The notes under the pieces were generated by a model. The model worked only from the letters and a program-made list of their open reading frames with translations. It was not told the origin of the DNA and ran no database searches. A DNA stretch of 63,070 nt, the filler included, from Olpidium bornovanus S191 (lineage: Eukaryota > Fungi > Olpidiomycota), in NCBI GenBank assembly GCA_017911155.1. It is 31 parts of 31 records of this genome, joined end to end, with 100 filler letters (N's around TTAATTAATTAA, not from the genome) between each part and the next. Parts side by side here need not be neighbours in the genome. Positions count along the whole stretch, not along the records: positions 2,370 to 5,089 come from JAEFCI010009726.1; 30 more parts are not named here. One strand, given 5' to 3'. How positions within the stretch are numbered: the stretch's first letter is position 1; each line of letters starts with the position of its first letter. The translations under genes were made by a program, and so were the position numbers. Below are positions 2,370-5,089 of the stretch, piece after piece.

Positions 2370-2940
2370 AAGGAAAATAGGCGAGAATTCAACAACGCGG
2401 GGCTCCAAGCTTTTGCGTGTGATGGGGTGCAGGGGCAGTCGGTAGGGGGCTATGGTTGGCGGGGGTTCCCGCGTGTGGCGCTGGGGGGGGAAGGGGGAAA
2501 GGGGGAAGGCTCTTCGATTGGCGCTTCGAGGTGGGAAGGGGGGGAGCGCTCTTCGATTGGCAGGCTTCGAGGGGGACTATTCTATTGGTCGGCCCCCGGG
2601 TTCGGGGGCCGTCCTGCCCTTGATCCTGCCGCCGCCTCCGCCCTTTGCCCGCCTCTCGCCCTTTGCCCTGCGCCCTTCGCCCGTCGCCCCTCGCCCGCCG
2701 CCCCTCGCCCGCCGCCCGCCTTTCGTGGCGTCGGTCGACAGGCGGTTCGAGGGCCGTGCTACAGCAAACCCTATTTGAATGCTGCGTGCATTCTCCAAAT
2801 CTGCGCTGCGTGCGCTAAGTGCTTTGATCACGGGTTTTTCCCTGATGCGATCAGGTTTTACTGAGATCACCAATGAAGTACGATCACGCTCACCTGGCTC
2901 TGTAGGCTGAGTGTCCGCTGAGCGAGGAGGAGTGTTGTGA
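2370..2940 (+). mobile_element. Degenerate Ty1/copia fragments (integrase-like) interrupted by an LTR-like insert
   Basis: 2371-2433 reads ENRREFNNAGLQAFACDGVQ (copia integrase DNGxEFxN motif). A TLFE-like segment follows the insert. Purine tract GAGGAGGAG followed by TGTTG near 2926-2939 resembles a PPT/LTR junction. Confidence 0.45.
2434..2763 (+). repeat. ~330-bp GC-rich LTR-like (solo LTR-like) element, copy 1
   Basis: Highly similar to 61019-61333 on the minus strand. Ends in GCCGTGCTACA; start GGCAGTCG versus GTAGTCG in copy 2, consistent with TGTAG...CTACA termini. Confidence 0.75.
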
Positions 2941-3163
2941 ACCGAAAGAGTACGCTCTACGGTCACGTGCCAAGACCCGGAGGGGAGCTCCCCCTGGAGC
3001 TCTTCCTCCCGGCGTCAAACGCAAACAACGGAAGGGAAAAGGAGAGAGGAAGGAAGACGGAAAAGAGAGAGCCCATTTTTCCGCAACAGAGCGCATGCCA
3101 ATAGTACAGGCGGAACGGCAACTCCCGCACGAGGAAACCGTTCCCCCCCGCCGCACCCCAGGA

Positions 3164-3424
3164 ATGCGCTGGCCCTTGGATGGCCTCGCCCCGCTCTTCG
3201 CCGCTGCGGCCGTCTCGGCGGCGCTGACGGACTGCCAAAAGTCAATCGTCCAGCAGACGACAAACATTTTCGAGAACAGCCAAAAGAACTTCGCTTTCGA
3301 CTACTGTGCCGACATCAACGACGGGAGGGGCTACACCTGCGGAATAGTCGGGTTCACAACGTGAGAGGGAGGCCTTGCTCCTCCTCGCCCCCATCTTCTC
3401 AGTCTCTCCGTCTCTCTCCCGCTG

Positions 3425-3490
<66 letters not shown>

Positions 3491-4374
3491 CTCGCTCTCT
3501 CTCTCGCCTCTCTCTGTTTCCCTCTTTCTCCTTCTCCGTTCCGTCCCGCCGTGAGGCCGCGGGACGATGGCCTTCCGGGGCCCGCGCCCCGCACTCAGAT
3601 CAGGCACTCTCTACTTTCGGGCCGCCGCGCCACACACTCTTCCGCAGGGCAACGCACGATGCCTACGACGTGGTCAAGACGTACGCGACCCTCCCGAACT
3701 ACACCGCCGAGTTCGATCCGTACCTCTCGCGGCTCGCCCAAATCAACGAGAGCGGCGCCGCCTCCACCTCGGGGCTGGCGGGCTTCTGCGATGCATGGTA
3801 CACCGCGGCGTCCAACCCGGCGTTCCGCCAACTCCAAGTCGCCAAAGCCGACTCCCTTTACTACGCCCCGTCCCAACACCTGGCCGACCTCATGGGCCTG
3901 ACCCTGCCCGTCTCGAGAGGCCAGTTTTACGACGCCGCGGTACAGATGGGCACCGCCGGCGACGCCGACTCCCTCCCCTCCGTAGCCGCCCGCACGCCGC
4001 GGCCCGCGGACATGGCCGAGGCCGAGTGGATCGGGAGACTCATGGAGGAGCGCGCGCGGACGCTTTGCAATCCCGCCGACCGCGCCACGCAGAAGGCGTG
4101 GTGCGCGAGCACGTATCGGGTGGCGTCCTACCAGCACGTCCTTGCGACGTCGCAGGCCAACTTCACGGACTCGCTCAGGGTGCTCGACAACGACGGGAAG
4201 GAGGTCGCCGTCGGCTGCGACCTGGACCTCTGGACGGCCTACGTCCCGGGCCCGCGCCCGTCGGCCGGCCTTTCTGCGGGAGCGGTCGCGGGCATCGTCG
4301 TTTCCGCGCTGGTGGTTATAGCCGTGGCGGCTATCTTGCTGCGCAGGCGGTTGAGGAAACAAATCGGGAAATAA
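3164..4374 (+). CDS. GH46 chitosanase with signal peptide and C-terminal transmembrane helix; join(3164..3360,3648..4374), 307 aa
   Basis: IFENS (catalytic Glu) and DINDGRGYTCGIVGFTT/ATHDA (catalytic Asp) are GH46 motifs. Also YYAPS, GQFYDAAVQMG. The phase-2 intron 3361-3647 (GTGAGA...CCGCAG) restores the frame. C-terminus AVAGIVVSALVVIAVAAILL followed by RRRLRK. Confidence 0.9.
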
Positions 4375-4929
4375 AGTGCCACGTTTGCACTCTGAAGGAG
4401 ATCTCGATACAGAAAAAGAGATCATGCACTGCAAACCAAAAATTTACAAGTCTCCTGGGAAAAAAAAACGTTTGGCGCACTTTACGGCCGCTTTCCCAAT
4501 TGCCGCGCATACGGCACCTTCGAACGGTGCATGCGGCCCGGTCGGATGGCGCGCGCCTCACGTTCAAACGGCGCACGCGGCACTTCCAACGCCGCCCCGT
4601 GCCGCACATACGGCACGTTCAAGCGGCACATTTCGGAACGTTCAAAACAGCACATGCGGCACAATTTATACGGCGTATACAGCACACCCCGTGGTACAAA
4701 CGAACGGCCACACTCCACCGGCAGGTTCGGCACATTACGGCACTCCAAATGACACGTGCAGCCCAGAGAAACTCCGTCCGAATTTTGGAGGTCGGAAGCT
4801 GGAAATCGCTTGGATCAAACTCTTCGTGCGGTTAGCCCAGGTAACCCTGCCGAACCTACTGCGTACTCTCCGACTACACCTCTAATCGGTATGGCCGTTG
4901 TCTTCGCTTCGAGTACATCCCCGACGATT

Positions 4930-5089
4930 CGAACCCTTCGTCAAGGTCCGCCGCCGAGGACGTGGAGACAGGCGATGGCCTCATACGATGCTCCGTACTG
5001 GCTGCCGGCTGCTATCAAAGAATACGGTACCCTTACTGCATCCCCGGCCTGGCATATCATCAGACGGCCAGCCCATTATCTCCTCCATG
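4930..5089 (+). mobile_element. Ty1/copia pol fragment (start of the RT region)
   Basis: PPPRTWRQAMASYDAPYWLPAAIKEYGTL...WHIIRRP matches the copia EPxTYxEAM...W..AM..E..SL...TW.LV..P motif. Runs into the contig end. Confidence 0.7.

What the first reader, a model, noticed from the sequence alone, without database searches (positions are those of the whole stretch)
3164..4374. Membrane-anchored, intron-containing GH46 chitosanase of bacterial type
GH46 is characterised mainly from bacteria (Streptomyces, Bacillus) and chloroviruses, while Dikarya chitosanases are typically GH75. This gene keeps both catalytic residues (FENS Glu, DGRG Asp) and has a spliceosomal intron, so it is integrated rather than bacterial contamination. 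It has a signal peptide plus a C-terminal hydrophobic helix and basic stop-transfer tail, i.e. type I membrane topology, unlike the soluble bacterial enzymes. Inference: an anciently transferred enzyme repurposed as a cell-surface chitosan-remodelling enzyme (encystment, germination, discharge) or for removing elicitors. This is the strongest novelty candidate in the window.
Basis: partly seen in the sequence, partly recalled or inferred. Interest (0 to 1): 0.7.

Follow-up and report, generated by a model that had tools for sequence, protein, structure and literature searches.

The report
Membrane-anchored chytrid GH46 chitosanase gene
This is a real, spliced and transcribed fungal (chytrid-type) gene for a chitosan-cutting enzyme held on the cell surface by a membrane anchor; the design is conserved across chytrid fungi, so the gene is an ordinary member of a little-studied family, not a one-off.

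Summary
Both exons pass Pfam PF01374, and they abut without gap or overlap on solved Bacillus and Gynuella chitosanases. The catalytic Glu and Asp and the DGRGYT motif are intact. The GT..AG junction 3360>3648 appears in contigs of two public runs. An N-terminal signal-like segment and a strong C-terminal hydrophobic helix with a basic tail are present.

The novelty claim is overstated. Orthologues with the same layout (signal peptide, GH46 domain, short stalk, TM helix, basic tail) occur in at least six chytrid orders and in Umbelopsis. Coemansia has GPI-like versions. The window's intron sits at the same codon and phase in Spizellomyces, Rhizophlyctis, Polychytrium and Nowakowskiella. The gene tree follows chytrid relationships, so the gene is old and vertically inherited.

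GH46 as a chytrid hallmark was published in 2019, and eukaryotic GH46 in 2015. I found no paper describing the membrane anchor, and no fungal GH46 seems to be biochemically characterised.

Best reading: a type I membrane-tethered endo-chitosanase that trims the cell's own deacetylated chitin at the membrane-wall interface. The function is inferred. An ancient bacterial origin is plausible but unproven.

The parts
3033..3163 (+). Probable 5' UTR. It contains an alternative in-frame ATG at 3095-3097 that would add 23 residues before M1.
   Evidence: The exon-1 contigs of X1 and X18 begin at 3033 and 3043, and depth rises there from about 7 to 65 in X1. The ORF 3095..3364 is in the same frame.
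3164..3360 (+). Exon 1 (65 codons plus 2 bases). It carries the signal peptide and the N-terminal GH46 segment with catalytic E37 (3272-3274), D53 (3320-3322), R55 and T58.
   Evidence: Pfam PF01374 E 1e-7. Alignments to 7c6c, 7c6d and 1chk.
3164..3220 (+). Predicted cleavable signal peptide (residues 1-19). The h-region is LAPLFAAAAVSA, with V at -3 and A at -1 before ALTDCQ.
   Evidence: Kyte-Doolittle 1.38, too short and weak for a TM helix. Orthologues have an AxA motif at the aligned place. Solved bacterial mature chains start aligning at residue 20. No SignalP run.
3361..3647 (+). Spliceosomal intron, 287 nt, phase 2, GTGAG...CAG. It contains a (TC)n microsatellite at 3403-3530.
   Evidence: Junction seen in contigs of X1 (depth 53) and X18 (depth 462); unspliced contigs are also present at lower depth. 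TRF. Same site and phase in four other chytrid genera.
3648..4374 (+). Exon 2 (1 base plus 241 codons plus the TAA stop). It holds the rest of the GH46 domain, the stalk, the TM helix and the basic tail.
   Evidence: Pfam PF01374 E 6e-23. PDB 6lwu E 8e-23 and 7c6c E 2e-20. 55-65% identity to Spizellomycetales orthologues.
3649..4218 (+). GH46 catalytic domain part of exon 2, up to the last invariant Cys (VGC). Sequons at 3697-3705 (NYT), 3745-3753 (NES) and 4159-4167 (NFT).
   Evidence: The alignment to 7c6c runs to exon-2 residue 182. Four Cys are invariant in 13/13 chytrid proteins and 0-2/15 bacterial-like ones; sequons are shared by 7-9 of 13 chytrid proteins.
4219..4269 (+). Short stalk of about 17 residues (DLDLWTAYVPGPRPSAG) between the domain and the membrane.
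   Evidence: Alignment A1. In the AlphaFold model of orthologue P0003 the equivalent linker is the low-confidence stretch 278-285, between the globular domain and the helix.
4270..4341 (+). Transmembrane helix (exon-2 residues 208-231).
   Evidence: Best 19-mer Kyte-Doolittle 3.05. A weak Pfam similarity to TM segments only. The orthologue model has a helix at 286-313. Conserved in all complete chytrid orthologues.
4342..4371 (+). Cytosolic basic tail RRRLRKQIGK (positive-inside).
   Evidence: Sequence. Orthologues have basic tails of 14-42 residues.
4375..5089 (.). 3' flank: a long 3' UTR or an overlapping transcript. No recognisable coding sequence.
   Evidence: One contig in each of X1 and X18 runs from 3648 past 5089 at one depth. 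Four ORFs here have no Pfam hit.

Best explanation
A native two-exon nuclear gene of a chytrid fungus (in or beside Spizellomycetales) encodes a type I membrane-anchored GH46 endo-chitosanase. Shown: the exon structure and splice junction; family membership with all catalytic-motif residues; orthology with chytrid GH46 genes, including a shared intron site; and conservation of the layout signal peptide, GH46 domain, stalk of about 17 residues, TM helix and basic tail. Inferred: the signal peptide is cleaved in the ER. The disulfide-bonded, probably N-glycosylated catalytic domain then ends up outside the plasma membrane, held within a few nanometres of it, with the basic tail in the cytosol. 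There it hydrolyses GlcN-GlcN linkages by the inverting Glu/Asp mechanism of GH46. Its substrate would be chitosan made by chitin deacetylases from the cell's own nascent chitin, so it loosens or trims the inner face of the wall during growth. Which life-cycle step it serves is unknown.
For: Gene model: Pfam on both exons. Exact collinearity on 7c6c, exon 1 ending at chain residue 47 and exon 2 starting at 49. GT..AG junction in contigs of two runs, with the spliced path deeper than the unspliced one. Catalysis: E37/D53/R55/T58 align with E19 of 7c6c and with E22/D40/R42/T45 of 1chk. These residues are invariant in the 12-protein fungal alignment A3. Fold: the AlphaFold model of orthologue P0003 (pLDDT 82.7) matches B. 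subtilis MY002 chitosanase at TM-score 0.90 and rmsd 2.0. Anchor: Kyte-Doolittle 3.05 plus a basic tail. A TM helix is present in every complete chytrid orthologue and in Umbelopsis. Secretory-pathway adaptations: four chytrid-invariant Cys and shared sequons, absent from bacterial-like relatives. Old residence: same intron site and phase in Spizellomyces, Rhizophlyctis, Polychytrium and Nowakowskiella. The gene tree mirrors chytrid orders. Self-directed role: the obligate plant biotroph Synchytrium endobioticum keeps a TM-anchored copy, and 'chitosanase activity' was found in all chytrids compared (PMC6572847).
Against: No enzyme assay, localisation or knockout exists for any fungal GH46 that I could find. 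The signal peptide and TM helix rest on hydropathy, alignment and an orthologue model, not on SignalP or DeepTMHMM run on the joined protein. The two runs that show the junction are only guessed to be RNA, and each junction contig has 29-30 letters on its short side, just under the tool's 31-letter rule. Two raw RNA-seq runs of the same species label gave no reads. Use of the upstream ATG at 3095 would lengthen the N-region. I found no data on chitosan in spizellomycete walls.
Confidence: 0.62

Rival explanations
1. The enzyme is nutritional or antagonistic. It is displayed on the rhizoid or sporangium surface and digests foreign chitosan (other fungi, detritus), so that the oligomers are released next to the cell's own transporters.
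For: Bacterial GH46 enzymes serve chitosan assimilation and antifungal attack (PMC4663542). Mycoparasitic Pythium species induce their GH46 genes on prey (PMC7720654). Surface anchoring would keep the products local.
Against: The obligate plant biotroph Synchytrium endobioticum keeps a TM-anchored copy. A stalk of about 17 residues cannot reach through the cell's own wall to outside substrates. Most genomes hold one or a few copies and show no expansion.
Confidence: 0.2
2. The C-terminal hydrophobic segment is a GPI-attachment signal, or the protein is shed. The mature enzyme is then wall-bound or soluble and does not span the membrane.
For: Small residues (SAG) precede the hydrophobic stretch. 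Coemansia and Cladochytrium tenue relatives end in a hydrophobic stretch with no tail, which is GPI-like.
Against: Ten strongly basic residues follow the helix here. Chytrid orthologues carry 14-42 residues with a recurring G-x-W motif, which is typical of a stop-transfer anchor and not of a GPI signal.
Confidence: 0.1
3. The protein is a catalytically inactive chitosan-binding sensor or lectin built on a GH46 scaffold.
For: Membrane tethering with a cytosolic tail resembles a receptor layout.
Against: Glu, Asp, Arg and Thr of the active site are invariant across the fungal clade. The tail is only 10 residues long and has no signalling domain.
Confidence: 0.05
4. The gene is a bacterial contaminant or a recent horizontal acquisition.
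For: The closest solved structures are bacterial.
Against: The gene has a spliceosomal intron that is spliced in public runs and shared in position with four chytrid genera. It shows 55-65% identity to chytrid proteins against about 35-39% to the best bacterial-like ones. It nests inside Spizellomycetales with 99% support.
Confidence: 0.01

Closest known systems
Predicted GH46 proteins of Chytridiomycota, e.g. Powellomyces hirtus 'chitosanase' (P0003), Geranomyces variabilis (P0002, P0004), Spizellomyces punctatus SPPG_01379 (P0008) and Rhizophlyctis rosea (P0011)
   Same: Orthologues at 55-65% identity (Spizellomycetales). They share the signal peptide, GH46 domain, stalk, TM helix and basic tail, the same invariant Cys, and in several the same phase-2 intron at GFT|T.
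   Different: The window's cytosolic tail is shorter (10 residues) and lacks the G-x-W...V-I-V ending of most Spizellomycetales. This exact protein is not in the 15-billion-protein collection. None of these proteins has been studied experimentally, as far as I could find.
Bacterial GH46 chitosanases of the Bacillus subtilis type (CsnMY002, PDB 7c6c/7c6d; Gynuella sunshinyii GsCsn46A, PDB 6lwu)
   Same: Same fold (orthologue model TM-score 0.89-0.90), same catalytic Glu/Asp and DGRGYT motif, about 33-37% identity.
   Different: The bacterial enzymes are soluble and secreted, with no C-terminal anchor (PMC4663542). They lack the four chytrid-invariant Cys and the sequons and have no introns.
Streptomyces sp. 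N174 chitosanase CsnN174 (PDB 1chk), the mechanistic reference for GH46
   Same: E22/D40/R42/T45 align with E37/D53/R55/T58.
   Different: A more distant GH46 cluster: exon 2 E 7e-7 against 8e-23 for 6lwu. Soluble.
Other eukaryotic and viral GH46: Lichtheimia ramosa and Rhizopus delemar RO3G_09825 (Mucorales), mycoparasitic Pythium, chlorovirus A292L/vChta-1
   Same: GH46 genes in or on eukaryotes. The Mucorales proteins are also Cys-rich (PMC4663542, PMC7720654, PMC10769135).
   Different: These are reported to sit near the chlorovirus and B. circulans clusters (PMC4663542, PMC7720654). The chytrid clade lies beside the B. subtilis-type cluster. I did not place these sequences in my tree.
GH75 chitosanases of filamentous Ascomycota
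   Same: The same reaction in fungi.
   Different: An unrelated family. They are secreted and are discussed as mostly non-self-degrading (PMC5872309). There is no Pfam GH75 signal here.

Membership tests
Glycoside hydrolase family 46 (chitosanase, PF01374) | Sequence match to the family profile above the curated threshold | tested here: met
   Exon 1 scores 32.2 bits and exon 2 scores 82 bits against a gathering score of 27. The profile ranges 3-37 and 40-196 are contiguous.
Glycoside hydrolase family 46 (chitosanase, PF01374) | Catalytic general acid Glu and general base Asp (E22/D40 in CsnN174; E19 in CsnMY002) | tested here: met
   E37 and D53 align with them. The E19A mutant chain 7c6d shows Ala opposite E37.
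Glycoside hydrolase family 46 (chitosanase, PF01374) | Arg and the water-positioning Thr of the D-G-R-G-x-T motif (R42, T45 in CsnN174; Thr45 is called essential in PMC4663542) | tested here: met
   R55 and T58 are present and are invariant in A3.
Glycoside hydrolase family 46 (chitosanase, PF01374) | Two-lobed, mostly helical lysozyme-like GH46 fold | tested here: inconclusive
Met for orthologue P0003: pLDDT 82.7, TM-score 0.90 to 7c6c.
Glycoside hydrolase family 46 (chitosanase, PF01374) | Endo-hydrolysis of chitosan | not testable with these tools
   This needs a recombinant ectodomain and an assay.
Chytrid GH46 orthologue group | Placement inside the chytrid clade of the GH46 tree | tested here: met
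   The window falls in the Spizellomycetales clade (99/98 support), which is sister to the Rhizophlyctis group. In the 170-row tree the 35-row chytrid core has support 96.
Chytrid GH46 orthologue group | Shared intron position (phase 2, inside the second Thr codon of GFTT) | tested here: met
   Same site and phase in Spizellomyces, Rhizophlyctis, Polychytrium and Nowakowskiella. The intron is lost in Powellomyces.
Type I single-pass membrane protein | Cleavable N-terminal signal peptide | tested here: inconclusive
   The n/h/c layout, the -3/-1 rule and alignment to the mature bacterial N-termini all fit. No SignalP run. The upstream ATG at 3095 is an open point.
Type I single-pass membrane protein | One C-terminal hydrophobic helix of about 20 residues followed by a positively charged cytosolic tail | tested here: met
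   Kyte-Doolittle 3.05 over 19 residues, followed by a tail with 5 Arg/Lys in 10 residues. Helix in the orthologue model.
GPI-anchored wall protein (considered) | The hydrophobic stretch lies at the extreme C-terminus with no charged tail | tested here: not met
   Ten residues with five basic ones follow the stretch. The feature is met instead by the Coemansia and Cladochytrium tenue relatives.

The most novel reading that the evidence does not exclude
Surface tethering is the ancestral state of a fungal GH46 clade: TM helix in Chytridiomycota and Umbelopsis, GPI-like signal in Coemansia and Cladochytrium tenue. This would define an uncharacterised class of plasma-membrane-anchored chitosanases that remodel the cell's own chitosan, possibly needed for cyst germination, rhizoid growth or opening of the discharge pore. 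The family would have entered the fungal stem once from bacteria and been lost in Dikarya.
Probability: 0.3. Interest if true: 0.55.

Novelty: new variant of a known kind. Interest (0 to 1): 0.3.

Why it matters
All biochemically studied GH46 chitosanases are soluble bacterial or viral enzymes. A conserved membrane-tethered form in zoosporic fungi points to an endogenous chitosan-remodelling step at the membrane-wall interface, in a lineage whose wall biology is poorly known. The step is now testable because Spizellomyces punctatus can be transformed (PMC7213984). For this window alone the value is modest. It adds one unannotated orthologue and confirms its splicing. It also exposes a wrong gene model for the model chytrid's copy.

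Tried and rejected
Bacterial contamination or recent transfer was rejected on the intron, the spliced contigs, the orthologue identities and the tree.

A GPI anchor for this protein was rejected on the basic tail.

Raw RNA-seq runs X20 and X23 gave no reads, so they are no test. Stage-specific expression could therefore not be addressed.

The flanking ORFs (2427-2966 and 4334-5088, both strands) have no Pfam hits.

A paper on interkingdom HGT in 44 early-diverging fungi does not mention chitosanase or GH46. The chytrid developmental atlas paper has no chitosanase or deacetylase data. One broad literature query returned nothing useful.

A search for the contig of the closest relative P0001 returned no DNA.

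The organism's name could not be learned, because run labels are coded.

Full report
**Observation.** The piece 2370-5089 holds one convincing gene on the + strand.
- The ATG is at 3164. Exon 1 ends at 3360, followed by GTGAG. The acceptor CAG ends at 3647, and exon 2 runs from 3648 to the TAA at 4372-4374. The split codon AC|G encodes Thr.
Pfam PF01374 (Glyco_hydro_46) hits exon 1 at E 1e-7 on profile positions 3-37. It hits exon 2 at E 6e-23 on positions 40-196. Both are above the gathering score.
- Against solved structures, exon 1 aligns to residues 2-47 of the Bacillus subtilis MY002 chitosanase (7c6c). Exon 2 starts at residue 49. The proposed splice therefore restores the family's sequence with nothing missing or duplicated.
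- E37 lies opposite E19 of 7c6c, and the deposited E19A mutant 7c6d shows Ala there. On Streptomyces N174 (1chk), E37/D53/R55/T58 correspond to E22/D40/R42/T45. Thr45 is called essential in the GH46 review PMC4663542.

**Splicing.** Laying public runs on the piece gave one joint: 3360>3648, GT..AG, skipping 287 bases.
- It appears in one contig each of X1 (depth 53) and X18 (depth 462). These two runs are not on record as the same study (X18 names none), and X18 may be the sample the window came from.
- Contigs that read into the intron are also present, at lower depth (25-31 in X1, 118 in X18). This is the pattern of RNA with some unspliced precursor. A DNA run would not hold the joined form.
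- Limits: the RNA nature of both runs is the tool's guess. The junction contigs have 29-30 letters on the short side, as expected where a k=31 graph branches, and this is just below the tool's 31-letter rule. Two raw RNA-seq runs of the same species label yielded no reads at all, so they are no test.
- The exon-1 contigs start at 3033 and 3043. This puts an in-frame ATG at 3095 inside the transcript. If it is used, 23 residues precede M1 without changing the hydrophobic core.

**Architecture.**
- The N-terminus has a short h-region (Kyte-Doolittle 1.38), with V at -3 and A at -1 before ALTDCQ. Orthologues carry an AxA motif there, and mature bacterial chains begin to align at that point.
- The C-terminus has a 24-residue hydrophobic stretch (best 19-mer 3.05; 4270-4341), followed by RRRLRKQIGK. 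This is a stop-transfer anchor obeying the positive-inside rule, not a GPI signal.
- Only about 17 residues separate the last conserved Cys of the domain from the helix.
- An AlphaFold model of the full-length orthologue P0003 (pLDDT 82.7) shows a globular domain, a low-confidence linker at 278-285 and a helix at 286-313.
- The domain of that model matches 7c6c at TM-score 0.90 (rmsd 2.0), Gynuella GsCsn46A at 0.89 and 1chk at 0.80.
- Four Cys are invariant in 13 of 13 chytrid proteins and nearly absent from 15 bacterial-like relatives. A further pair co-occurs in 8 of 13. Three N-x-S/T sequons are shared by 7-9 of 13 chytrid proteins. These are marks of a protein that matures in the secretory pathway.

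**Relatives.**
- The word search found Spizellomycetales proteins at 55-65% identity: Geranomyces, Powellomyces, Thoreauomyces, Fimicolochytrium and Spizellomyces SPPG_01379.
- A profile search added Rhizophlyctis, Nowakowskiella, Synchytrium, Polychytrium, Gaertneriomyces, Phlyctochytrium, Dipsacomyces and Basidiobolus. The named bacteria among the 27 hits (Chitinophaga, Kofleriaceae) appear only at E 1e-26 or weaker, and the best unnamed bacterial-looking hits at about 1e-49.
- In a 30-row maximum-likelihood tree the window pairs with an unnamed Logan protein inside a Spizellomycetales clade (99/98 support). That clade is sister to the Rhizophlyctis group. Outside it come Synchytrium with Polychytrium, then Nowakowskiella, then Dipsacomyces. 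This follows the organismal relationships.
- Every complete chytrid orthologue has the C-terminal helix (Kyte-Doolittle 2.5-3.3) and a basic tail.

**Intron conservation.** I mapped the annotated proteins back onto their contigs.
- The window's intron site (phase 2, within the second Thr codon of GFTT) is occupied by an intron of the same phase in four genera. They are Spizellomyces punctatus (78 nt), Rhizophlyctis rosea (86 nt), Polychytrium aggregatum (126 nt) and Nowakowskiella (74 nt).
- Powellomyces has lost it, and Dipsacomyces has none there.
- The intron therefore predates the split of at least four chytrid orders.

**Wider distribution.**
- The exhaustive representative search found 1871 GH46 clusters at E <= 1e-3.
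- In a tree of the 150 best plus earlier hits, all named fungal rows except Basidiobolus form one 60-row clade (SH-aLRT 85). It sits beside a 102-row clade whose members look bacterial: lipoprotein or signal-anchor N-termini and few Cys.
- Name look-ups show TM-anchored members in Cladochytrium replicatum, Chytridiales sp. JEL0842, a second Nowakowskiella and a second Polychytrium gene, and Umbelopsis sp. (Mucoromycota).
- Coemansia interrupta, C. spiralis and Cladochytrium tenue end in a hydrophobic stretch without a tail, which is GPI-like.
- The Rhizophydiales models (Gorgonomyces, Globomyces) stop at or just after the end of the domain, before where the anchor would lie.
- Surface tethering thus looks like a general property of this fungal clade. 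The tree is unrooted in any meaningful sense, so a single ancient bacterium-to-fungus transfer is plausible but not demonstrated.

**Mechanism.**
- Shown: an intact GH46 active site, a secretory layout and a very short tether.
- Inferred: the domain faces the wall from the outer leaflet and can only reach polymer within a few nanometres. That polymer would be chitin chains newly extruded and deacetylated at the membrane. This suggests trimming or loosening of the cell's own chitosan.
- Retention of a TM-anchored copy by the obligate plant biotroph Synchytrium endobioticum favours a self-directed role over feeding. So does the report that all compared chytrids carry chitosanase activity terms (PMC6572847).
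- The feeding or antagonism reading remains the main rival.

**Novelty.**
- GH46 was reported as found only in the chytrids among the fungi compared in 2019. It is listed for zoosporic fungi in a 2019 review.
- The first eukaryotic GH46 sequences (Lichtheimia, Cys-rich, uncharacterised) were noted in 2015. Pythium and Rhizopus cases followed.
- No paper I could find mentions a membrane anchor on any GH46, and the review describes the bacterial enzymes as secreted.
- The window's gene is thus one more member of a catalogued but unstudied family. The membrane-tethered design is a real, conserved and apparently undescribed variant.

**Not done.** All searches used the exons by reference or natural orthologues. 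SignalP and DeepTMHMM are not available here. Mucorales, Pythium and chlorovirus sequences were not in my tree.

Noticed in passing
L006:3001-4100 (Spizellomyces punctatus KQ257451.1): The public model SPPG_01379 (252 aa, no anchor) looks wrong at its 3' end. Frame 0 reads straight through the annotated second 'intron' into the conserved AWC...LDNDGK...C...PGP stretch. It continues through a TM helix and an RRWKSGSWRP tail, then runs into an assembly gap of N. The model chytrid therefore probably also has the anchored form.
   Followed up: partly
window 3403-3530: A (TC)n microsatellite of about 65 copies (80% matches) fills nearly half of the intron. Read and contig depth drops there because repeats are skipped.
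   Followed up: no
window 2485-2720: G-rich then C-rich tandem repeats (periods 7, 14, 18, 21 and 39) lie upstream of the gene. Short contigs matching them reach depths of thousands in X18, so the motifs are repeated many times in that sample.
   Followed up: no
window 4375-5089: The 3' flank lies on the same contig and at the same depth as exon 2 in both runs, and the contig extends at least 256 bases beyond the piece. No ORF here has a Pfam hit. It is either a 3' UTR of at least 0.7 kb or an overlapping neighbour transcript. An AATAAA overlaps the stop codon. Extra contigs with loose ends touch 4394-4433 in X1.
   Followed up: partly
window 3005-3088: One X18 contig (377 letters) matches 3005-3088 with 4 differences and then diverges into unrelated sequence. 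It could be a paralogous or repeated 5' region.
   Followed up: no
L002:3653-3740 and L003:3863-3990: A second intron site (phase 0, GQ|MYDAA) is shared by Rhizophlyctis and Polychytrium but absent from the window gene and from Spizellomyces. This suggests intron loss in the Spizellomycetales line.
   Followed up: partly
P0012 (Synchytrium endobioticum), P0019 (Nowakowskiella sp. JEL0078): These public models fuse the GH46-TM protein to an EF-hand protein (N-terminal) and to ATP phosphoribosyltransferase (C-terminal). They are probably merged neighbouring genes and not real fusions.
   Followed up: no
P0072, P0155 (Coemansia), P0102 (Cladochytrium tenue), P0035 (Umbelopsis): Relatives outside the chytrid core switch between a GPI-like C-terminus and a TM helix with a tail, so the tether type changes while tethering itself is kept. 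Basidiobolus GH46 proteins (P0024, P0157) fall outside the fungal clade, next to unnamed rows in the bacterial-looking clade. This hints at a separate origin.
   Followed up: partly
P0001 (Logan contig, closest relative, 61% identity): Its prokaryote-style ORF call starts with unrelated residues and joins the family exactly at ...S|ATHDAYD. This is what an intron at the same site would produce.
   Followed up: no
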